A stretch of 63,989 bases of DNA, filler included, from Sluysia triapertura (Eukaryota), in the NCBI GenBank assembly GCA_046118255.1. It is 5 parts of 5 records of this genome, joined end to end, with 100 filler letters (N's around TTAATTAATTAA, not from the genome) between each part and the next. Parts side by side here need not be neighbours in the genome. Positions count along the whole stretch, not along the records: positions 17,028 to 30,108 come from JBJNIA010060982.1; 4 more parts are not named here. One strand, 5' to 3'. Position 1 is the stretch's first letter. Each line of letters begins with the position of its first letter. Under the pieces are notes generated by a model. That model saw only the letters and a program-made list of their open reading frames with translations. It made no database searches and had not been told where the DNA came from. The position numbers and the translations under genes are program-made. Shown here one piece after another: positions 17,028-48,213 of the stretch.

Positions 17028-17095
<68 letters not shown>
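17028..17095. repeat. (AAT)n microsatellite at contig start
   Basis: Direct reading. Confidence 0.95.
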
Positions 17096-17096
<1 letters not shown>

Positions 17097-20000
17097 TCAT
17101 TTATTTCATTAGATCACACTTATTATTATCATTATTATTACATTATACTTATTGCATAATTATTTTACTATTCAGCGAGAGTATTTATCGATATTCATAA
17201 AAATAAATAAAAAGCTTTCGACATTTTAATATTACTCCGAAATTGCCTTTATGTTTACGAATATTCTACATTAAACGGTTGATAATAATAATAATTATTA
17301 TTATTATTATTATTTATTTATTTAACTTTAACTTTAATTTAATTTTTAATTTAGTTTTTACATTTGATTAATATTTCGCCGATTTCCAATTATTTTTTAT
17401 TAAATTTATTTTTACATTATTTTTATTTTTTTTTGTTTTTATTTTTATAATTATTTTTTGCATTTTGTTTTTATTTTATTTCTATTTGAAATGTTTGATT
17501 AATGTTTATCTGAGTTATTTGAACTTTTTAAAAATCCAAACAAAAAACAACAAAATAAATAAACAAATGTAAAATAAAAACATAAAAAATAAATTAAAGA
17601 TATAAAATATCAAAAAAAAGTATTTGTAAAAACATATTGATTTTACAAAATTATTTTAATAGAAATTTAACGAAATTTCAAAACTGTCGAATGAAAATTT
17701 ATGTTGAAATTTAATAATGATGATCAAAATATCTTGTTTCGATTTTTTTGTTTTACAAAAACTATAATTTTATCGAATTTAATATTTTAAATACATATTT
17801 CAATACATTTGCTGTTTATTTTCTTATTTTCGTTATTTCCAAAAACAAAAACTATTATTATTACTATTATTATTAACAAAAATTATTATTATATTTTCTT
17901 AAATTTAAACTTTATTTTAATAAATGTATAATCAGCAGACACGTATTAATTAAAAATACTTACATATCAATTTTAGAAAATTATGAAGATTATTAAATAA
18001 TATTAATAATATTATTATTATAAATTAAATTATAATAGTTATAATAGTAAGAAATAATTAATTTTAAATATTATTATGCTGAAAATTTGTAATTCTGAAG
18101 TGTTCTGAACATTATATTTTAAAAATATTCCGAAAATACATGCTTACAAAATATAGGAATATTCCTATGCAATACAATCTTTAAAATATCCAATAATTTA
18201 TGGAACCATTTAATATTATAACTGAAAAGTATTTAAAAATATCGATATTGTTTGGATTTTCTATTTGAATTTATTTCAAGAAATCGAAATAATTTATTAA
18301 AAATTTTATCTATCTTCATGCATTTGCACGGTGACGGTGGACTGTAATATAAAGTTAATATTACAATAATACTATATTTATTAAAATACATATATAAATA
18401 ATTTATATATGTATATATTTGTTAATATCTATCTATGTGTGTTTATATGTTAACAATTCATATGTGTTTAGATGATCATAATACACGTAAATAGATATTG
18501 AATATCGATTATTTCTTTTTGAAAATTTATATGAAAATCTATACTAATTCGGATTTTATTTAACATTTTAAAACATTTTATTTAATTAAAAAATTATTTA
18601 AAATATAACTTTGTTTAAATCATTAAATTAAGTAAACTAACCAAGGTCAGTTTCATAATAGAATAAATAGAATAAATAATTTTCACAATTTTTAAAAGTT
18701 TATTTTCGGAAAATTCAAGGAAAATTTTTTTGAATATTTAAATTAGTCATTCGTTAGTTTATTATTAATAAGATTATTTTTATTATTATTGAGATTATTA
18801 TTAATAAGATTATTATTATTATTATTAGTTTATTATTATTAAGATTCGTACCGGCTAGGGAAAGAGTAATATTTCACTTAATTTTAATTTTTAATCAACT
18901 TTGGAACTTTTTAATATTTCTTACGTAAAATCATTATTAAAATATTTAATCGTTTAATTAACTGTTTTGAGTTAATTTTTTAACTTTATTATAGCTAATA
19001 CCTTATTGTAACCTCATTGTATTAAATATACTTTAGTGATGCAAACTTTTGTTTTTTAATAAATTTAAAATACCTGAATTTTATTGGCATCGTAAAATAT
19101 CTTATTTTTGAATCCTTTTAACGGATTCGTCGTAAAATTATCATAAACCACATAAATAATTTAGTATATCCTTTATAAGAATATTGATTTTACTACTTAA
19201 ACTTAATTGTTTCTAGTACGTTGATGAACTCACCATATTCTTTTATTCTTGCTCTTAGGAAATGAGAAAATATGATTCGCTAAATAATTTAAACCAATTA
19301 AATAGTATTTACATTAAAACATAGTTGTTTTGAAGAATAGGTAGGTCGTTTATTATTGTTATAGTTTTAATAATATAAACAACAGTAATGATTATAATAA
19401 ACATAAATAATAATGAAGCTCTTCGAATCTAATAAAACAAAACTATTGCATATTTTATTAATATTATTATAGAAATAAATACTTATGAAATTTTGAAAAG
19501 TTATTGTAATAATGATAATGAAATTAATAATCATAATGATAATTATACTCTTTATTTAATTTTTTATTTAATTTTAATATTTAACTTAATTATTTCTGAC
19601 TAAATTAATAATTTATTAATGTTAAATTATTTATATCAAATAAAGCAAAAAAAATATTTTGTAAATAAAATCATCAATTGGAAACCAAATTCAATAATAA
19701 ATAATGCACATATACATAAAATATAGTGCATAAGAATATCTAACTGATACTTTTTTTGTCAAAAATTCGACAAAAAAGAAGACGATAAAGCAGATTACGT
19801 TTTAAAATCAGATTGTACTAATTAACATATTCTAAATAAAAGTACTAAATTTTAAAAAAAATACACTAATTACAATAATGAGAGCAATTGTAGAAAATGC
19901 AATATTTATTAAATGTGAAATTTTAAATGGTACAATTAGTAAAGCACAATTTTCAAAACTTTATTTTAAATGACAAACTCTCAAAAATGGTATCATAGAA

Positions 20001-20178
20001 TATCAGATACTTAAATTAAGATATTTAGCATCATTTCACTTCAATTTCCAATTGGTTTAGTTTTCTTAAGCTACAACTTTATTTTCTTTCACAATTCGAT
20101 CTTCTGAATGATTTTTGATTTTTGATTAACGTTGTTTATTTTTATTTTTACTTTTAGTTAATGAATACCGAATATATT

Positions 20179-20337
20179 TGTTAGACTTCATAAAATGGAC
20201 TGACCGGGGATCGAACCCGGGACCTTCGATTCGCAGTGCGAATGCTCTACCACTGAGCTATCAGCCCCGTCTAACAATTTCATTTTCAATATATTCAATT
20301 ATACTACTTGGCACTTTTTAGGCCTTTTACCCCAACA
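20179..20337 (-). mobile_element. 159-bp TG...CA element (solo-LTR-like) containing a tRNA-Ala-derived gene; copy 1, intact
   Basis: On the minus strand it reads TGTTGGGGTAAAAGGCCT...ATGAAGTCTAACA, flanked by the direct repeat ATATT at 20174-20178 and 20338-20342. Homologous copies lie at 24954-25693, 30036-30108 and 45663-45836. Confidence 0.8.
20196..20267 (-). tRNA. tRNA-Ala-like (pseudo/TE-borne) gene with non-canonical anticodon arm
   Basis: 72 nt: GGGCTGA TA GCTCAGTGGTAGAGC A ... GGTC CCGGG TTCGATC CCCGG TCAGTCC A followed by TTTT. A and B boxes are intact and G3:U70 and A73 are present. The anticodon stem pairs poorly around TGC. Confidence 0.6.
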
Positions 20338-20739
20338 ATATTACTTAATAATTTAGAAATTACAATTAGAGATAAACCTAATAATTCTGGATCTCCAATT
20401 GTATCACCAACAGTTTATATATAGAGAATTAAAATATAGAAAGCTGTTAACCACATTGTCCTTTCATTGGAACATATCATAATCATACCAAAGAAGTCTT
20501 TTCCCCAATCTTTCTGAAGCCTAAGACTCTCAATAATTATCGCTCATTTTTGAATTACTCACTTCAATTTTATAATAATAACAACAAATCGAAATACTAA
20601 TTATGTTACATAAAATTAAAATGATATGTAGAAAAATCTTTAAAAACAAGATTAAGTGAGAAACTGGAATTTGTCATACTTAATAATGTCGGGATTGCCC
20701 AACTGTGGAACAAGAAATAAGTAAAAATCATATGGAATT

Positions 20740-21050
20740 ACAAAATAGAAGAAGTAATGGATAAAATATTATAAACACATTTGGAGTAAGAACAATGAAG
20801 AATTGAAAAACATCTTAAAGTTCCAAAGATCTTTATAAGGTGTTGAGATGGGTTTGGAAAACCTTGGAAAGTTGTGAACCTTGAGATCATCTAAGATCTC
20901 CTTGACCTTTAAGAACCTTGAGTAACCTTATAAAGTATTTGAAATCTTTAAAATATTTGAGAAATAAAATTATTTTTCAAGATAAATTAACATAAAGTAT
21001 AACATAATTTTAGAACCTTAATAAAACCTACAAGCATAATAGATTAATTA
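20740..21050 (+). repeat. Dispersed repeat; an inverted, diverged copy lies at ~28610-28990
   Basis: GTTGAGATGGGTTTGGAAAACC and CTTTAAAATATTTGAGAAATAAAAT recur as reverse complements near 28893-28914 and 28802-28827. Confidence 0.6.
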
Positions 21051-21053
21051 AAA

Positions 21054-21596
21054 CCCTTTAGTCGCCGCTGGGATCAATTGGTCCCACTCATACTCTTGCA
21101 AGTTTCTCAGGCTTAAGCGGGTCATGTTACATATTGTTTTAGAGGATTAAATAAGGACAATGTTTTGCATAATCGTTTCTACTCTTAGAGTATGTGCACA
21201 AAGTTATTTCAATAATATACGACCATTTGGTGAGAATAATATTTGAATCAAATAAAATAAGTGAACATATTATAAAGTCTAAAGTTATTATTACTTTTGT
21301 TAGAAGATGACAAATTGCTTTGGAATATTCCACATTATATTACACTTTGATATAGAATACTAAATTTACCAATTTTTTCACATTTTATGCTATTTTATTG
21401 AAAATTCATGAAAAATTACACATTTTTATTAATTTTGAAATTAACACTAACGCATGTGGCACTAGCTTTTTAATGGCTTTTCTCACATATATTTTATATA
21501 ATCTCTCAAATAAATTTATGTTCGCAAAAAGAAAAAGTACATTTTTGTGAATAACGTTTGATTGCTGATTTGTTTTAAAAAGACCTTTAAAAAGGG
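21054..21596. mobile_element. Degraded piggyBac-like non-autonomous element
   Basis: CCCTTTA...TAAAAAGGG termini in decayed TTAA-like contexts, with a GC-rich subterminal region. Confidence 0.4.
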
Positions 21597-23099
21597 TTCA
21601 AGTATGGAAAGCCTTAATATTAAGCAAATTCAAATTTTAATTAATTTTTAATTATGGAATGTTGAATTTTTTATACTTAGAATTATGAATTGAATATAAG
21701 ATGATTGATTTAGAAGTGATTTATTTGAGAATAAGAACCTTAAATGTATTTCATTAGAAAAATTGTTGTGAAAACCTAGAAATCAACTAAATTCTAAAAA
21801 CTAAAATTAAATTCAGTACTTTCTGTATATAAATAATATTGATTATTATTGTTACTTTAATGTGAGATGCAATTTAAGTAATGATAGATCGAGTAAATAA
21901 AAGAAAATAATGGTTACTCATTAATCAAATTTTTTTGTTATGTACCCTAATAAAGTTTGAGAGACCGTGTTATGTAAATGTCACAATTTTTATTGACAGT
22001 TTCATGTTTATTTGTAATCACTGGATAGCAAATAATTATAAAACGAAGTACTTGGAAATTTTACAACACAATCACAATTAATTATTCAAAAGAGGTCCTC
22101 CAAAAGTCCCTGAATTAAGTAAAACATTAATTTATTATACACATTTATTTTAATTTTATTATTTTATTGTTAATTTATTGGGAATCCCCATTTTTATTTA
22201 ATTGTTTATTAATAGTAATTTTAGTAATAAGTTTTATATAGTTTTTCAGGAATTACCCTATCATTTTTATTTATAATTTTGAAGATACTTTTAGGAACTC
22301 CATTTATTAATTTAATTTAAATATTTTGAATACATTTCTTTGGGGATTTCCCTTGTTATTTTAGAGTATAATTTAGCTTTGAGAAATATAGAAAACTTTT
22401 ATCAATTCATAGTTTTGTTAGTTGTGTCAACCCTCGTTCTAAAAGATTATCATAAAATTGCTGTTAATTGCAAGATTAGTCATATTTATTTAGTCATATT
22501 TATAATTATAACAGTTGTCTTTTTTATCTTACAAAATTTTAAATTTAATATTGGAGAGAGACAGATTAGGTAGTATTAAGAAATCACTAAAGAAGTAATA
22601 ATATGATTTGTATTGTCGATAAAGAAAAAAACCCATTGTGATAACTTGTATTTGATTTTGCAATTATTAAATTTAGTGAGACTTTAAGTTAAATTAATTT
22701 TGTTATTTAGTTATTGTTATTAATATATACGGAGAGAGAGAAAACTGGTTATACAATCATAGTATAAGATCAAATATATGTAAATTATTATAGAACTAAA
22801 TTTATTAGATAGTATAATGTTAAATTCAAAGGAATTTGATTATAGTGAAGATGCTATATATTGAAATTAAATAATTATTGACTATAAGTTACTGAGAACA
22901 AATTACTATATGTAAGAAGCAGAATTATTATTATTATTAAAATTATTAAGTCGGATTAACTTATATCACTGCATCTCACTTTGTAAATATACTATCAAGA
23001 TATTATTAGTAAAATATTGTGCAACCATCTAAAATATTTCAAATTATTAATAAATAATTAACATTTCCGTACAGAGGTTTGTCTATATACAATCTATAT

Positions 23100-23330
23100 C
23101 ACGGTTTCTCAACCGTTGGGTCGCGTTAAATATTTTATGGGTCGTGGACTCGCGGCTTAGTATAAATAATATAATATATTATAATACAAATATAAAAAAT
23201 TAATTTATATAATCAAAACGCTAATTAGCGCCAATAGTACACGTCTTTTTTATTTCTTAGCATTCCTTTGTGTAATAACAAATTGGGTCGCAAAACAATC
23301 TGAAAAAATTTTACTGTGTCGCAGGTAACA
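23100..23330. mobile_element. hAT(Charlie)-like MITE remnant
   Basis: Terminus CACGGTTTCTCAACCGTTGGGTCGCG and repeated GGGTCG subterminal motifs. Confidence 0.55.
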
Positions 23331-24953
23331 TGTGTTTGTGTAACGTGGCATCAATTTAGATTCGAATTCTATAAATGATTTTATGAAAACATATATCCAT
23401 CTCCAAATTGGCTTAAATTTATTTCATTAAACGAAGTGGTAGTCACATCAACTATAAAATATGTAGTTTTTCAAGGTTAAAAACCGTTTTTTGTATCGAT
23501 TTTGATTTCAGAACAAAGAATTTAAATATTACCAAAACGATGATTGAATAAAGAAGCGGGAAAATATTAATTACTATTTTAAATACAAAATCAAATGTCA
23601 CTTAATTTTACTTACCGAAAAAACCGTTATTTTTTTTAACTGAAATTTTTGACTAACAAGGCAGCTATAGCAGTCACCTTAAAATCGAATATTTGTGCCG
23701 ATTTAAGCAAGACAATCTCATATTATTTAAATAATTTAGTAAATTTTGAATTAACCCTTTATTTTAATTAAAGATCTTCTTTATAACTATTGAGATTTAT
23801 TTCAATAATTAACTATATCTGAGATGTTTAGAATTGCGAATAAAATTTAAATAAAATTTAATAATTTAAAAATATATAAAAATATTTGATTAATACGTAG
23901 CCGAAGCTACACATTATAAATTAAAAATTAAAAGCAGTGAAACTTAAACATATTAACTAAATTATGAATGTTCAATTCGAGATACTTTTATCAAATTTAT
24001 ACTAATAATTATGGTTTATTCTTATTTGGTTATATGTTTTAATAAAAGATTTAGCATTTGTTTGTCATATTTCGAGTTAACTTTTCACAATTTTGTAAAA
24101 GCAAATAAATTAGAATCAATAAATTTTCTAAAAGTGTATTGTATCATTTTTTTACACTTACAATTTATTGCCCAGAAATTCTTCAGATCTTTTTGGCCTC
24201 TTATTCTAAAGACACTTTTTGTTTTTGATTATATTTTTAAATACCACCTTTCTTAGTATTACTTATTTTATGTATAACTCATATATCATCGATATCTTTA
24301 ACTAATTTGCATTGTGTTTAAAATCAAACTTATTCCGATAGTTAATGCCAAATATTTTCAGTCAATTTTAAATTAGAATTTTTTAAAATTTAAACAAATC
24401 AAACAAATTGTTTTACTATTAAAAATTAACAATTCACTTATAACTTTTGTTGTAATAGGTAAATATACTAGTATTATTTGTTTATGTAGAATTTCGGAAC
24501 CACTTAGAGCAGTAAATGAAGAAAAACTGTATAAGCTTTTACACCTCAATATTAATAGTATTTATAATGATGATATCAATAATTATTTAACCTTTTTTAT
24601 GGTAGTTTTTAAAGATAGGAATTTTTCAGATTAAAGATAATGGCATGAGCTTTCATTTGATACCAAAACCTGTTAGAATGAAAACTTTTTTGCACGAAAT
24701 AAGGATAAACAATTAGAAAATCAGTCAAATGGTATTAAAAAAACTTGCTACATTATTTTTGATCTTTCTCTCTTTACCTTTGCAAGATACTGTAAGATTC
24801 GGTAAATATTTCACTTATGGATTTCAGAAAAGAACTAATTAGAAAAGTTATCGAAAAGTTTGTCAGGCAAAGAGAAATATTGAGAGGAAGGCCATCATCT
24901 GAGTGGTAGACATTTTCTATCATTCATTCCGGTATTTGGCCCGAAATGGTTAA

Positions 24954-25693
24954 TGTTGGGGTAAAAAGGCCTAAAGTGACATTTGGTAAAATTGACTATA
25001 ATAAAATAAAATCGTTAGACGATGTTTATAAATTATTGTAATTATTTATTAAATTATTATAATTATTATATAATAATTATTTATTAAATTATTATATTAA
25101 ATTATTATAATTATTATATAATAATTATTTATTAAATTATTATATGAAATGCAAGCTAGGCCCTTAGGAATCCATAATTATAACAGTTGTTTAACCTGTA
25201 ATATTCGTAAAAGAAAAATGATGATGAAATTCCTAGAAAAATGTTCGTGATGAATTAAACCACATCAAATTTAAATCATCTCATGAAGCAAATGTAAATA
25301 AAATAGTTAATAATTTTAGTTAATAATTTTATTGAAGAAGTATTAGATCATGACATCGATCCTTCAGTGCCTGTTGCTACTTCATATGAAGTTGATGAAA
25401 GTCCATGTCAAAGAGTCACATTATCAGATGAAACGAGAATTCCTTATTCATATATCTTTAATAAGACACAATATACATGCAACAAACTTGTGCCTTATAT
25501 TCCAAATTTTATCAGAATAAAAGAATTAAAAAATGAAGAAAATGAGATGGAAGTAGAAAATTAGGTGTATATAATTTTGATTAATTTAACATGATTTATT
25601 GTATTGCTATTAGAAAATCAATTTGATCATCGAAATGAGCAGCGAGAGGTCCCGGGTTCGATCCCCGGGCAGTCCATTTTATGAAGTCTAACA
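24954..25693 (+). mobile_element. tRNA-bearing TG...CA element, copy 2, interrupted by ~600 bp of unrelated sequence
   Basis: 5' half TGTTGGGGTAAAAAGGCCTAAAGTG...CGTTAGACG at 24954-25021. 3' half GAGGTCCCGGGTTCGATCCCCGGGCAGTCCATTTTATGAAGTCTAACA ends at 25693. TTAA lies on both flanks. Confidence 0.7.
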
Positions 25694-28609
25694 TTAATAC
25701 AACTGTCATTTCTAAATCTTATCATTTGCAAGTAATTTATTATTACTATTAACATGCAATATCAGTTTAACAATGTACAAGCAATAATAATTTTCTAGTA
25801 TAATTATTCAAGGTCAGTTCAGAGTTATTTGTTGGAACAACACTTTTTTGGTATTGGATTTAGTTTATTCTCTTTCAATGATTTATTAATTGATTATAAA
25901 TCTTTATAAAGTTTAAAATAATTACTACTAAAACTGTATGTACCAGGAATTAAAAATAAATTAAATGAATATTTAGCTATTTTAAATTTTTCTCCATTAA
26001 AAAAAATAAAATAATACATTTAAATAAACAATGTACAATAATAAATTTATATTTATTTTCTAAAAGTTTTTTATAATGTACCTTGATTTATTATTATTTT
26101 TATTTTTAAAATATTTTAATATCTTTATTACATTTTATATTATTAAATTACTTCCAATTTCCTGATTATTGTCTATCTATTTTAACAAGGAATTTATTTA
26201 TTAGATCATCTGCTTTTTTTCAAGAATTTTCCTGATACGGAACTACAGTTCAATTCTGAATTTGGACATTATTACTAATTCTGGTTACTCAACTTATTAT
26301 TTCATCCTTATTTTTTAATGAAGTAACTATCTACATTTTATTTTCTTTTAATTACAATTATATTTGAAACAGAGATATTAATTGATTTGACCAATTGAAT
26401 TTCATTTAATTCTGGATTTTCTATTTTACATTTAAAAATTATTTAATTAATGATTTCATTTTTAGGCATCTATAAAATGAATTAGGATCCTTTAAATCTT
26501 ACTTTTTTAATTTTACTTGTTAATTATAATATCTAGAGTTTTCCATTGTGATAACCTTTTCTCTACATAATTTCACTGATGAATACACTTTAGTATTACT
26601 CATTCATAATGCTTATTCATTACTAAAGTATTTGACTGATCTGAAACATCTAGACAAATATTAACTTAACTTTCACCAGGAAATAATCTTTCACTTTTTC
26701 AATATTGAATTCCAATACGATTCTAAGTATTGTTTTATGGCATTTGTATAGATTTTACATTATTATCTCCAATTTTTGTATAACTAATGAATTATTTTTT
26801 GAAACGAAATATCCGAATGCTAAAAACCTTTTGAAATATATCTTGTTTTATATGCTTAATTTGTTCATTGGAACCAACTCTGACATTATTCATTCTACAA
26901 ATTATATTTAAATAGTTTACAATTAAATGTTGCGTCTTTGAAATTACTTGTAACAATAATTCAATATCCGTTTACTTTGCTTAAATAGAATCCCAGTAAT
27001 TTCAATACTCACTAGATCAAGTATAAGTTATCGCAAATTTTAATAATGATATTTATTCAACCAAAAAATTACGTTCTTAATTAAAATTAATAATAACTCA
27101 ATTATATAATAATTGCAAAATCAAATGCAAATCGTTATTATAAGTAATTATAATACAAGTAAACTAACAAACATTAACTTTCATAAAAATATCAAGCACA
27201 CAACAATCTATCCAAAGAAACCAGAAACAAAAATCAAAATATCAATATCTAAAGAAATTGAAAATAATAATAATAATACTTATATATTGTCAAATTATTC
27301 CATTCTAACTTAATAACAAACAAGTTATAAAATAATTCGGGTAGGGAATCTCCCAAAAAATCAATTTATCAATAGCTTAAAAATTATTATAGTAGCAAAA
27401 GTTAGTTAAAGATTCCCAAAAAAATTATTCTTTTTAATAATAATTAAAATAATACAAAAAACATTACCATGATTGTTTGTTAGCTGACTCTACGATTTAT
27501 TGTAAAATTTTTAAGCTTTTTATTTTATACCTTCGCATCATCAAATCAATCCTGCGTTTCACAATAGATAAAAAGAAATTAGTAAATTAGTTAAATGATG
27601 TTGAAAATAGAAGATGATGTATCGCACGATTTTGTCCTGACAGATAGTAATGATCTGACATTTTGCCCAAACTGGTAGAGATCTGTACATAATCCAAAAG
27701 AAAGTTTATTCTCTTATAACTACATAAAATTAAGATCAAGTTCATGTTACTTATCAAAATGTTTAAGATCAATTGTTGAACAAATTTTAATTGAGAAATA
27801 TTTAGATTGAGATTTCATTCAACCAAATGATGCTTTTATTGTTCATAAAAATGGATTTAGAATAAATTATCAAAAATAATAAAAATAGTTTATCACTAGA
27901 ATTACTTCTAGAATTTCCGTAAATAAAATTATGTCCGGCCTTAACGAAACTTGTAAAATTCTGATTAAGTCTGATTTTGTAATTCCTAACGGAATTAAAT
28001 ATTATCAAGAAAAACTTACTGATAACTTAATTTAATCAGGGAAAGATGAATCACTGAAATCAGCAGTCTAATCAACGAATATCACGAACGATGAATTGTG
28101 TTGATTACAAGAACGACAGTATGACTTTGATCATTCTATTACCAATGATGCCAAAAGAAACTCAGTTCACAACAAATCGGTTTTTTAAATTTTTCTTCTT
28201 GTTAATCTTGCGAGTAATTGATATATATCATCAATAAGTTTTAATTTTTTGAATTATTATTGTTTATTTATTTTTAGAAATTTTTTAAACAAATTAGGTT
28301 AGTTGAAACAACAAGAAATAGTGATTAATCAGTCGAAAGTTAGAGGACTTATTTATCCTGATTAATTTGTTTTAAAACACTGCAGAAAAGTAAAGTAAAT
28401 TACTCATTTTATTTTAATTTAGAATTCAGATCAAATGAGGTAAAGTTAATATTTCTTTTTATTATTATTATATTTATTATTATTATTATTATTACTTTAA
28501 TTTTATTATTATTCTTTTTCATTATTTCAGCTACTGGTTTTGACAATAGCATTTTCATTCAAAAGTAATTCATAAAAACCTACTTTTTCTTAAGTTAATT
28601 AAGATTTTA

Positions 28610-28990
28610 ATTAATTAATCTATTTTTAGACTTAACCTTATTTTATGTTTAAAGGTTTTACTTAGGTCTTAAAGTTATTTAATAGTTTATAAAACATTCC
28701 GGAGGCTCTAGATGTTTTCATCTTCATCCCTCTGATTAATTTTTCCACTTCTTCATGTTAATTATTACCATACTAGGTTTGTCCTTAATACCGTAACAAT
28801 GATTTTATTTCTCAAATATTTTAAAGAATTTAAGTATTTTATAAAAAGACTAAAGTATCTCAAATGCTTATCGATGTTTTAAATGATCTGAGGGTTTTCA
28901 AAGTCCATCTCAAACACTTATATATAAGTGTTTGTAATCCTAAGATATTCTTTAGCTATTAATAATATTATAGATGTTTTCAGTTTCGCG
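28610..28990 (-). repeat. Second, inverted copy of the 20740-21050 dispersed repeat
   Basis: Reverse-complement similarity to 20740-21050. Confidence 0.6.
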
Positions 28991-30035
28991 ATTCTAAAAA
29001 ATTTTGAACAATTTGTGATCCTGAACCAAACATTCTAATTTATATTTATTTACACATATTTATATAATTATTTACGCATGTAAACCTGATCATAATTTTA
29101 AAATACATGTATTAATTTCAAATTAATCGAACTGCCCAGGTTCGACCCCTATATTATAATATTTTAAATTTTTAACACAAACAGTATCCACAATATACTC
29201 ATTTCACCATATTCATTGTTAAAAACTTCATCTGTTAAAACAAACTTTAACATTGATTTAGAACATTGATTCACTAATTTCTAGTCTTTATCTCATATTT
29301 GAAAAAGTATTTCCCAAATATTATTTCTTCTTTATCTGTAATATTTTCTAATTGAATTTTGAAATCTAATTTCACATTGCAGATATATTATGGGTTTGAA
29401 ATTCTTAAACTTCTAATAACATCAAATTAAAAATAGAATCATAAAATAATGAAATTTTAATAAATCATTTTTCTTAATATCGTATTTGTTATGATCTAAA
29501 TATAATTTAAATTTATTAGAAATTTCCTCATTTTTAAAGAAAAAAAATCTTTAATTAATGTGTCATGTAAAGTTGGATCTAGTTTTAAATTAAAGAGATT
29601 ATTGTTCATTAGTAATTATTAATTATTATCAGATTCTATTATTATAACAATAATAAAGTCATCAATATTCCTCAATTTTTTCAATATTTTATTAGTTCAT
29701 TGTTATTTTAACTCGATTTTTTGTTTATACTTTTATTTATAGTTTGTAATTTCAATAGATAAACACAGAATTTATTTAGTCTTGATTTATTTATTTTAAT
29801 TTCTTATTTAGGCCGGATTGAAATCACAATTTCTGCCATCGGTTTTATCTACACTTTTTGAGTGTCCTTTTGAAGAACAAACCTATAGTTATAGTAAAGT
29901 ATTCATAAATAAAATAAAATTATTTATTTATTAATTTTATTTATTAAAATTATTTTATTTTATTGATATTATTAGACGACAAAATAGTAGATTTTTTCTT
30001 AATCCAAAGAAATAGTCTCAACAAGAGCATGTTAT

Positions 30036-30108
30036 TGTTAGACTTCGTAAAATGGACTGACCGGGGATCGAACCCGGGACCATCGTCTGCGCAGTGCGAA
30101 TGCTCTAC
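30036..30108 (-). mobile_element. tRNA-bearing element, copy 3, truncated by the contig end
   Basis: TGTTAGACTTCGTAAAATGGACTGACCGGGGATCGAACCCGGGACC...GCAGTGCGAATGCTCTAC is nearly identical to copy 1. Confidence 0.8.
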
Positions 30109-48185: not shown

Positions 48186-48213
48186 TGTTGAGGTACAGGC
48201 CTAAAGTGTCATT
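48186..48213 (+). mobile_element. 5' terminal fragment of the tRNA-bearing element
   Basis: TGTTGAGGTACAGGCCTAAAGTGTCATT resembles the copy 2 start TGTTGGGGTAAAAAGGCCTAAAGTGACATT. Confidence 0.5.

What the first reader, a model, noticed from the sequence alone, without database searches (positions are those of the whole stretch)
20174..20342. A solo-LTR-like mobile element built around a tRNA gene
Seen in sequence: a 159-bp unit begins TGTT, ends AACA and is flanked by a 5-bp direct repeat (ATATT). It contains a 72-nt tRNA-like gene with intact A/B boxes and a T4 terminator. About 70 bp of element sequence lies upstream of the tRNA and is shared with the copies at 24954 and 45663, and its first ~28 bp with the fragment at 48186. 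There is no poly-A or simple-repeat tail. Established: ordinary tRNA SINEs start at the tRNA head and end in a tail, whereas TG...CA ends with a 4-6-bp TSD mark LTR-integrase products. Cassandra TRIMs carry a 5S Pol III promoter in their LTRs, and I recall tRNA-bearing analogues being reported in some animals, which needs checking. Inference: this is the solo LTR of a non-autonomous LTR retrotransposon driven by a tRNA Pol III promoter. Four to five copies in 64 kb suggest an abundant family.
Basis: partly seen in the sequence, partly recalled or inferred. Interest (0 to 1): 0.85.

Follow-up and report, generated by a model that had tools for sequence, protein, structure and literature searches.

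The report
tRNA-bearing solo LTR (Helenus-like)
A 159-base mobile repeat carrying a broken tRNA copy as its built-in promoter looks like the leftover end (solo LTR) of a miniature retrotransposon of the "Helenus" kind described in 2024, so it is probably a new family of a known kind.

Summary
At 20179-20337 (element on the minus strand) lies a 159-bp unit. It starts TGTT, ends AACA and is flanked by an exact 5-bp repeat (ATATT). It holds a 72-nt tRNA-like sequence (Rfam tRNA, 58 bits) with A and B boxes and a T4 run.

Two more copies lie in the 13-kb piece:
- B, 24954-25693, plus strand, split at its A box by about 596 bp and flanked by TTAA.
- C, 30036-30108, minus strand, cut off by the piece's edge.

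Similarity between copies stops exactly at TGTT and AACA. The tRNA-like part cannot decode: a 6-bp stem with a 3-nt loop replaces the anticodon arm, and that arm differs in all three copies.

The build (about 69-bp leader, tRNA-like, T-run, 13-nt tail) matches the LTRs of Helenus, the tRNA-bearing TRIMs that Kojima described in 2024. No family-specific word of this element occurs in that paper's consensus file, so it is a distinct family.

The defining proof was not found: no two LTRs enclosing a PBS and PPT, and no further copies could be fetched.

Verdict: a Helenus-like solo LTR (about 0.6) and a new member of a known kind. The host is unknown.

The parts
20179..20337 (-). Copy A: the complete 159-bp unit, TGTT...AACA (solo-LTR-like)
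   Evidence: Sequence. Its ends are set by where similarity to copies B and C stops.
20174..20178 (.). Flanking direct repeat ATATT (target-site duplication, one side)
   Evidence: The chance of such a 5-bp match is 0.5%.
20338..20342 (.). Flanking direct repeat ATATT (target-site duplication, other side)
20269..20337 (-). 69-nt leader upstream of the tRNA-like part (U3-like). It starts TGTTGGGGTAAAA and ends TGTTAGAC.
   Evidence: 84% identical to 24954-25025. The first 19-22 nt and the last 8 nt are the best kept.
20196..20267 (-). 72-nt tRNA-like sequence (R-like). G3:U70 in the acceptor stem. The anticodon arm is replaced by a 6-bp stem with a 3-nt loop.
   Evidence: ARAGORN tRNA-???. Rfam RF00005, 58.2 bits, with one inserted base in the anticodon stem. 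Fold.
20250..20260 (-). Pol III A box, TAGCTCAGTGG
   Evidence: Read from the sequence. It matches TRGCNNAGTGG.
20207..20217 (-). Pol III B box, GGTTCGATCCC
   Evidence: Read from the sequence. Identical in copies A, B and C.
20192..20195 (-). T4 run directly after the tRNA-like 3' end (Pol III terminator-like)
   Evidence: Kept in all three copies.
20179..20191 (-). 13-nt tail ATGAAGTCTAACA (U5-like). Its last 8 nt are the inverted repeat of TGTTAGAC at 20269-20276.
   Evidence: The 8-bp pairing shows in the folds. The tail is identical in B and has one change in C.
24954..25025 (+). Copy B, left part: the leader plus the first bases of the tRNA-like part
   Evidence: nhmmer E 2e-4.
25026..25621 (+). 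About 596 bp of unrelated sequence splitting copy B at its A box, with about 15 nt of the tRNA-like part lost. It starts with 35-bp AT-rich tandem repeats. Its origin is unknown.
   Evidence: No clear inverted ends or flank repeat. The 85-aa open frame at 25307-25561 has no homologue.
25622..25693 (+). Copy B, right part: tRNA-like from the 3' side of the D arm to the end, T4 and tail
   Evidence: 89% to A and 87% to C; nhmmer E 1.6e-10.
24950..24953 (.). TTAA flanking copy B (left)
   Evidence: The chance of a 4-bp match is 1.4%.
25694..25697 (.). TTAA flanking copy B (right)
30036..30108 (-). Copy C: tRNA-like 3' two-thirds, T4 and tail. The rest is cut off by the piece's edge.
   Evidence: 94% to A; nhmmer E 1.8e-14; sequence.

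Best explanation
The 159-bp unit is most likely the solo LTR of a miniature non-autonomous LTR retrotransposon. Its LTR carries a decayed tRNA copy as an internal RNA polymerase III promoter. That makes it a Helenus-type element, a 'TRIMp3' in Kojima's terms.

Proposed anatomy, read on the minus strand:
- U3 is the 69-nt leader that starts TGTTGG.
- R is the tRNA-like sequence, from its 5' end to the T4 run.
- U5 is the 13-nt tail that ends AACA.

Proposed working (inferred, not shown):
1. Pol III binds through the A and B boxes and starts at the head of the tRNA-like part in the 5' LTR.
2. It reads through the weak T4 run and the short internal region, and stops at the T4 run of the 3' LTR.
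3. Reverse transcriptase from an autonomous LTR retrotransposon copies this RNA and rebuilds both LTRs. This is how the 69 nt upstream of the promoter travel with the element.
4. That element's integrase inserts the DNA through its TG...CA ends and duplicates 5 bp of the target.
5. Later recombination between the two LTRs leaves the solo LTR seen here.

The 5-bp duplication and the TGTTGG...AACA ends point to a Copia-type helper, or possibly BEL/Pao. The tRNA-like part serves as a promoter only; it cannot decode.
For: Shown:
- Three copies in 13 kb share the unit, and their similarity stops exactly at TGTT and at AACA. The flanks are unrelated.
- Copy A has an exact 5-bp flank repeat (chance 0.5%). 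Copy B has TTAA on both sides (chance 1.4%).
- The tRNA-like part scores 58 bits on Rfam tRNA, has A and B boxes, and is followed by T4.
- It has no anticodon loop, and its anticodon arm differs between A, B and C. The B box, the 3' acceptor strand, T4 and the tail are nearly identical in all three. That pattern is expected if the promoter and the element's ends are what is kept.
- The leader lies upstream of any internal-promoter start, yet it belongs to the repeat.

From the literature (PMC10886601):
- Helenus LTRs are 104-323 bp.
- They hold a non-functional tRNA-like sequence with boxes A and B kept.
- The consensus LTRs start TGT and end ACA, with a leader, a tRNA-like part, a T-run and a short tail. 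Examples are Helenus-1_SMo, Helenus-6_PCor, Helenus-1_LiLo and Helenus-3_LAn.
- Fungal and plant families give 5-bp duplications and look Copia-mobilised.
- Some families survive only as solo LTRs with their duplications.
- Helenus-1_CroRib LTR shares our first 9 bases, TGTTGGGGT.
Against: - No full-length element was seen. None of the three copies has a PBS-like sequence after AACA or a polypurine tract before TGTT.
- There are only three copies, one of them cut and one split, so the boundaries rest on two 5' ends and three 3' ends.
- The flank repeat is 5 bp at A but 4 bp as read at B.
- No family-specific word of this element occurs in Kojima's consensus file, so there is no sequence link to a proven Helenus.
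- A T4 run directly after the tRNA-like part in the 5' LTR would have to be read through.
- No transcription data could be obtained.
- The host organism is unknown, so I could not check whether Copia, Gypsy or BEL partners exist. Pfam found nothing significant in the piece.
Confidence: 0.6

Rival explanations
1. It is a short non-autonomous DNA transposon (a MITE). A cut-and-paste transposase of the retroviral-integrase type, such as Ginger2/Tdd, moves it as DNA. The tRNA-like piece is a captured passenger.
For: - Ginger elements have TGTNR ends like LTRs. Here both ends fit the pattern (TGTTG and TGTTA).
- Ginger2 makes 4-bp duplications in AT-rich RTATAY targets, and Tdd-4/5 make 5-bp ones (PMC2836005). 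The rebuilt target of copy A contains ATATAT.
- No LTR pair, PBS or PPT was seen.
- An 8-bp inverted repeat, TGTTAGAC/GTCTAACA, brackets the tRNA-like part.
- A DNA transposon would also carry the leader along.
Against: - Ginger terminal inverted repeats are about 40-270 bp. Here the two ends share only TGTT plus scattered bases.
- The 8-bp inverted repeat is internal on one side, not terminal, and the inner 97-bp unit has no flank repeat.
- The whole layout copies that of published Helenus LTRs.
- No transposase relic was found in the piece.
Confidence: 0.15
2. It is an ordinary tRNA-derived SINE, copied from a Pol III transcript by a LINE's reverse transcriptase.
For: It has a tRNA-like head with A and B boxes and a defective anticodon arm. 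It is short and present in several copies.
Against: - The 69 nt upstream of the tRNA-like start belong to the repeat, and a transcript from the internal promoter cannot carry them.
- T4 follows the tRNA-like part at once, leaving only 13 nt.
- There is no LINE-derived 3' region and no A-rich or simple-repeat tail.
- The ends are a sharp TG...CA with 4-5-bp flank repeats, not long variable ones.
Confidence: 0.05
3. Copies C and A, both on the minus strand and about 9.7 kb apart, are the two LTRs of one large, non-coding, decayed LTR element. In that case neither is a solo LTR.
For: They have the same orientation. They are each other's closest relatives: 94%, against 87-89% to copy B. There is a weak gag-like hint (DUF1759, E 0.021) at 26795-26971 on the same strand.
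Against: - Copy A has its own exact 5-bp repeat on both sides.
- There is no PBS after C and no polypurine tract before A.
- With LTRs still 94% alike, the coding domains should be recognisable, but Pfam finds none.
- The DUF1759 hit is at chance level for ten queries.
- The interval holds an old inverted duplication and copy B.
Confidence: 0.05
4. It is not a mobile element. These would be local duplicates of a tRNA pseudogene with its flanks, and the flank repeats would be chance in AT-rich DNA.
For: The genome is 78% A+T, so short flank matches are not rare. Only three copies were seen, all within 10 kb.
Against: - Similarity ends at the same bases in all copies, and the flanks are unrelated.
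- Two independent flank repeats have a joint chance of about 7e-5.
- The copies lie in both orientations.
- Eight other organisms' runs hold 10-19% of the locus's sampled 31-mers. That is more than a shared true tRNA could give, because neither half of the tRNA-like part is 31 nt long without the aberrant arm or the flanks. This last point is an inference.
Confidence: 0.03

Closest known systems
Helenus (TRIM with a tRNA-like sequence in its LTRs; Kojima 2024, PMC10886601)
   Same: - The LTR-sized unit (159 bp) falls within the published range of 104-323 bp.
- The ends are TGT...ACA.
- The order of parts is the same: leader, tRNA-like part with boxes A and B, T-run, short tail.
- The tRNA-like part is not a working tRNA.
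- The flank repeats are 4-5 bp.
- Solo LTRs that keep their flank repeats are known.
- The first 9 bases equal those of Helenus-1_CroRib LTR.
   Different: - No full-length copy with a PBS and PPT was seen here.
- There is no sequence match to any published consensus beyond generic tRNA motifs.
- The DNA is far more AT-rich than the published consensuses shown.
- The host is unknown. If it is an animal, a 5-bp duplication would differ from the 4 bp reported for animal Helenus.
Cassandra and Ajax (TRIMs with a 5S rRNA-derived Pol III promoter in their LTRs)
   Same: The principle is the same: a small-RNA gene fragment inside the LTR supplies an internal Pol III promoter. Kojima groups them all as TRIMp3, and they make 5-bp duplications.
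   Different: The promoter here is tRNA-type (boxes A and B), not 5S-type (box A, IE, box C). Cassandra is a plant lineage and Ajax is known from two nemerteans.
tRNA-derived SINEs (SINE2)
   Same: A tRNA-like head with A and B boxes, used as promoter only. The element is short, non-coding and interspersed.
   Different: SINEs start at the tRNA head, have a LINE-related or simple-repeat tail, and have longer variable duplications. This unit has a 69-nt leader, no tail, and TG...CA ends.
Ginger2/Tdd DNA transposons and their short derivatives (Bao et al. 2010, PMC2836005)
   Same: TGTNR ends, 4-5-bp duplications and AT-rich targets.
   Different: Ginger elements have 40-270-bp terminal inverted repeats; none are present here. 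No tRNA-like module is described for them.

Membership tests
Helenus / TRIMp3 | tRNA-derived sequence inside the repeat, with box A (TRGCY...YGG) and box B (GGTTC) kept | tested here: met
   TAGCTCAGTGG at 20250-20260 and GGTTCGATCCC at 20207-20217. Rfam tRNA scores 58.2 bits.
Helenus / TRIMp3 | The repeat ends in TG...CA like an LTR, at the same bases in every copy | tested here: met
   TGTT at two 5' ends (A, B) and AACA at three 3' ends (A, B, C). The flanks are unrelated.
Helenus / TRIMp3 | Target-site duplication of 4 bp (animals) or 5 bp (fungi, plants) | tested here: met
   Copy A has ATATT/ATATT, exactly 5 bp. Copy B has TTAA/TTAA (or TTAAT if one T was lost). Chance is 0.5% and 1.4%. 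The far flank of copy C lies outside the piece.
Helenus / TRIMp3 | Full-length element: two direct LTRs enclosing a PBS and a polypurine tract | tested here: inconclusive
   None among the three copies in 13 kb. No further copies could be fetched. Kojima lists families known only from solo LTRs.
Helenus / TRIMp3 | LTR length within the family's range | tested here: met
   159 bp, against 104-323 bp in Table S1.
Helenus / TRIMp3 | Sequence similarity to a described Helenus family | tested here: not met
   Family-specific words from the leader, anticodon arm and tail have 0 occurrences in DataS1. Only generic tRNA motifs and the first 8 bases, TGTTGGGG (as one 8-base query), occur there. This makes it a separate family. 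It does not rule out the kind, which Kojima argues arose several times.
Helenus / TRIMp3 | Transcription by Pol III from the LTR | not testable with these tools
This is also unproven for published Helenus.
tRNA-derived SINE (SINE2) | The element starts at the tRNA-like head | tested here: not met
   A 69-nt shared leader precedes it.
tRNA-derived SINE (SINE2) | 3' tail: A-rich, a simple repeat, or LINE-derived | tested here: not met
   Only T4 plus 13 nt follow, ending AACA.
Ginger-type MITE | Terminal inverted repeats of tens of bases | tested here: not met
   The two ends share TGTT and little more. Ginger terminal inverted repeats are 40-270 bp.

The most novel reading that the evidence does not exclude
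The 159-bp unit might be the whole mobile element, not a leftover. It would then be a one-LTR, SINE-sized, Pol III-driven element that an LTR-retrotransposon or integrase-type machinery inserts without any internal PBS/PPT region. It would be spread over at least nine organisms with very AT-rich genomes. A milder version: a Helenus lineage in a host group where none is known, using a 5-bp (Copia- or BEL-type) insertion.
Probability: 0.12. Interest if true: 0.7.

Novelty: new member of a known kind. Interest (0 to 1): 0.4.

Why it matters
- tRNA-bearing LTRs inflate tRNA gene counts. In rust fungi nearly all of the most numerous predicted tRNA types come from Helenus copies. Recognising this family keeps such pseudo-tRNAs out of the annotation of this genome and its relatives.
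- Each copy also plants a possible Pol III promoter, which can affect nearby chromatin and genes.
- If the host lies outside the groups listed by Kojima, the family widens the known range of Pol III-promoter TRIMs. It would add a case for the idea that they arise repeatedly.
- This does not open a new question: the kind was described in 2024.

Tried and rejected
**Fetching more copies. All attempts came back blank.**
- Exact-pattern scans of the tail, leader and anticodon arm found nothing in metagenome contigs.
- A shorter 17-base leader pattern gave 100 loci. BLAST with the whole element showed them to be chance hits.
- Genome contigs gave nothing, nor did viral contigs.
- A protein search with the 47-aa frame across the element, meant to catch spurious gene calls on other copies, found nothing.
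- An exact look-up of an 81-aa frame, meant to find the source contig, found nothing.

**Reads.**
- The look-up of sequencing runs gave only coded names. One run holds 84% of the words and eight other organisms hold 10-19%.
Frames overlapping them were filtered out. Only local scripts in the closed sandbox read the whole piece.

**Coding content.**
- Pfam on 20 stop-free frames gave nothing above chance. That includes a DUF1759 hint at E 0.021.
- By eye, a piggyBac-transposase-like C-terminal pattern appears at about 24700-24960, but Pfam does not support it.
- The 85-aa frame inside copy B has no homologue.
- The two Atlas look-ups stayed under their reliability marks.

**Readings rejected.**
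- Copy B as a full-length TRIM. Its 740-bp length is like wasp Helenus, but it has one leader and one tRNA-like 3' part, not two LTRs.
- The inner 97-bp unit bracketed by the 8-bp inverted repeat as the real mobile unit. It has no flank repeat, and the leader is shared by A and B.
- The tRNA-complement next to the tail as a PBS. It lacks the CCA complement and lies inside the unit.
- The 596-bp insert in B as a recognisable transposon. It has no inverted ends and no flank repeat.

Full report
**What is there**

The piece (17028-30108) is 78% A+T. GC runs from 14% to 32% per 500 bp. It has almost no open frames: only two ORFs of 70 aa or more.

At 20179-20337 lies a 159-bp unit whose sense strand is the minus strand. 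Read on that strand, it has four parts:
- A 69-nt leader that starts TGTTGGGGTAAAA.
- A 72-nt tRNA-like sequence at 20267-20196. ARAGORN calls it 'tRNA-???'. Rfam tRNA scores 58.2 bits against a gathering score of 29.
- A T4 run directly after its 3' end.
- A 13-nt tail that ends AACA.

ATATT flanks the unit on both sides, and the repeat is exactly 5 bp.

The A box (TAGCTCAGTGG) and the B box (GGTTCGATCCC) are good. The acceptor stem has G3:U70. But one extra base in the anticodon stem makes the arm fold as a 6-bp stem with a 3-nt loop. It is therefore a promoter-competent tRNA relic, not a tRNA gene.

**Other copies in the piece**

The repeat finder, BLAST and nhmmer find exactly two further copies.

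Copy B is on the plus strand.
- Its leader and the first bases of the tRNA-like part lie at 24954-25025, 84% identical to copy A.
- About 596 bp of unrelated sequence follow, and about 15 nt around the A box are lost.
- The tRNA-like 3' part, T4 and tail lie at 25622-25693, 89% identical to A.
- TTAA flanks the whole.

Copy C is on the minus strand at 30036-30108, 94% identical to A. The piece's edge cuts it off.

Similarity stops at the same bases in every copy: before TGTT in A and B, and after AACA in A, B and C. The flanks are unrelated.

**Is it more than chance?**

In this piece a 5-bp flank match at this spacing occurs at 0.5% of positions, and a 4-bp match at 1.4%. Copy A is the only TGTT...AACA pair 80-400 bp apart with a 5-bp flank repeat. 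The ends were set by similarity between copies, not by the flank repeats, so the two flank matches together are very unlikely to be chance.

**What is kept and what drifts**

Across the three copies these parts are nearly identical:
- the B box and T arm;
- the 3' acceptor strand;
- the T4 run;
- the tail;
- the first ~20 nt of the leader (compared between A and B only).

The middle of the leader and the anticodon arm differ. Each copy has its own version of the anticodon arm. With only three copies this is a hint, not a proof. It does fit a family in which the element's ends and its Pol III promoter matter and decoding does not.

An 8-bp inverted repeat brackets the tRNA-like part plus T4: TGTTAGAC just before the tRNA-like part, and GTCTAACA at the very end. 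I have no firm explanation for it. It may be a trace of a shorter ancestral LTR.

**Mechanism**

An internal Pol III promoter starts transcription at the tRNA head. A SINE-type copy made from that transcript therefore cannot carry the 69-nt leader. The lack of any tail, the T4 run 13 nt from the end, and the TG...CA ends also argue against a SINE.

Two known routes carry promoter-upstream sequence along:
- LTR-type reverse transcription, in which U3 is rebuilt from the 3' LTR.
- Cut-and-paste DNA transposition.

The layout fits the first route: U3 is the leader, R is the tRNA-like part up to T4, and U5 is the tail. TG...CA ends and a 5-bp duplication are what an LTR integrase leaves. A solo LTR that keeps its duplication is the usual product of recombination between two LTRs.

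These steps are inferred: Pol III initiation, read-through of the first T4 run, trans-mobilisation by a Copia- or BEL-type element, and LTR-LTR recombination. What is shown is the anatomy, the shared ends and the flank repeats.

**Comparison with what is known**

They exist. Kojima (2024, PMC10886601) described Helenus.
- Helenus elements are TRIMs whose LTRs hold a tRNA-like sequence. They occur in rust and other fungi, six animal phyla and Selaginella.
- Together with Cassandra and Ajax they are called TRIMp3.
- Their LTRs are 104-323 bp.
- Boxes A and B are conserved, and most copies cannot encode a working tRNA.
- Fungal and plant families make 5-bp duplications and share PBS types with Copia. 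Animal families make 4-bp duplications and match Gypsy.
- Some families are known only from solo LTRs with duplications.

The consensus LTRs I could read in the paper's data file have the same order of parts as this unit: TGT-start leader, tRNA-like part, T-run, and a short tail ending ACA. Examples are Helenus-1_SMo, -6_PCor, -1_LiLo, -3_LAn and -2_PiNo. Helenus-1_CroRib even starts with the same nine bases.

None of this element's family-specific words (leader, anticodon arm, tail) occurs in that file. So it is a distinct family and not a catalogued Helenus, at least as far as that paper goes. I could not consult Repbase or Dfam.

**What is missing**

The defining feature of a TRIM is two LTRs around a PBS and a polypurine tract. 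It was not found.
- No copy is followed by a tRNA-complementary stretch or preceded by a purine run.
- Copy B, at 740 bp, is not a full-length element. It has one leader and one tRNA-like 3' part, so it is a single LTR split by an insertion.
- Every attempt to get more copies failed. Scans of metagenome, genome and viral contigs were blank or gave chance hits only. Protein-based tricks were blank too.
Only local scripts read the whole piece.

**Spread of the family**

Run look-up shows one run holding 84% of the locus's sampled words. Eight other organisms, with coded names, hold 10-19%. Neither half of the tRNA-like part reaches 31 nt without the aberrant arm or the flanks. So those shares probably mean that family-specific sequence of some 60-85 bp is present in other organisms. 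This is an inference from word counts, not an alignment.

**Rivals**

- An integrase-type MITE is the main rival, at about 0.15. Ginger2/Tdd elements have TGTNR ends, make 4-5-bp duplications and prefer AT-rich targets (PMC2836005). Their 40-270-bp terminal inverted repeats are absent here.
- Copies A and C might be the two LTRs of one 10-kb decayed element. Against this stand A's own flank repeat, the missing PBS and PPT, and the absence of any coding relic despite 94% LTR identity.
- A SINE and a non-mobile duplication are both unlikely, for the reasons given above.

**Verdict**

Novelty is a new member of a known kind. The host is unknown. If it is an animal, the 5-bp duplication would be unusual for Helenus. 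Interest is 0.4.

Noticed in passing
window 20269-20276 and 20179-20186: An exact 8-bp inverted repeat, TGTTAGAC / GTCTAACA, brackets the tRNA-like part plus T4. It extends the acceptor stem in the folds. Copy B keeps 7 of the 8 bases on the left side. It may be a trace of a shorter ancestral LTR.
   Followed up: partly
window 25026-25621: About 596 bp split copy B at its A box. The insert starts with four 35-bp AT-rich tandem units (25034-25151). It holds an 85-aa stop-free frame (25307-25561) with normal amino-acid make-up but no homologue or Pfam match. No inverted ends or flank repeat were found.
   Followed up: partly
window 20795-22726 versus 28963-27049: An old inverted duplication, about 60-70% identical in patches over roughly 1.9 kb. 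The two arms are about 4.3 kb apart. It may be two decayed copies of another repeat family facing each other, and copy B lies between them.
   Followed up: partly
window about 24700-24960, plus strand: By eye, the shifted frames read like the C-terminal part of a piggyBac-type transposase: KWY..LL.YF, then FR.EL, then GRPS, then GRHF..IP. Copy B sits right after this stretch at a TTAA. Pfam gave no support for the pieces.
   Followed up: partly
window 26795-26971, minus strand: A weak Pfam hit to DUF1759 (E 0.021, 15 bits, below the cut-off). This domain is found in the gag of BEL/Pao retrotransposons. The hit is at chance level for the number of queries.
   Followed up: no
window 17028-17100 and 17282-17323: A long (ATA)n/(ATT)n microsatellite lies at the start of the piece, in a region of only 14% GC.
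   Followed up: no
   Followed up: no
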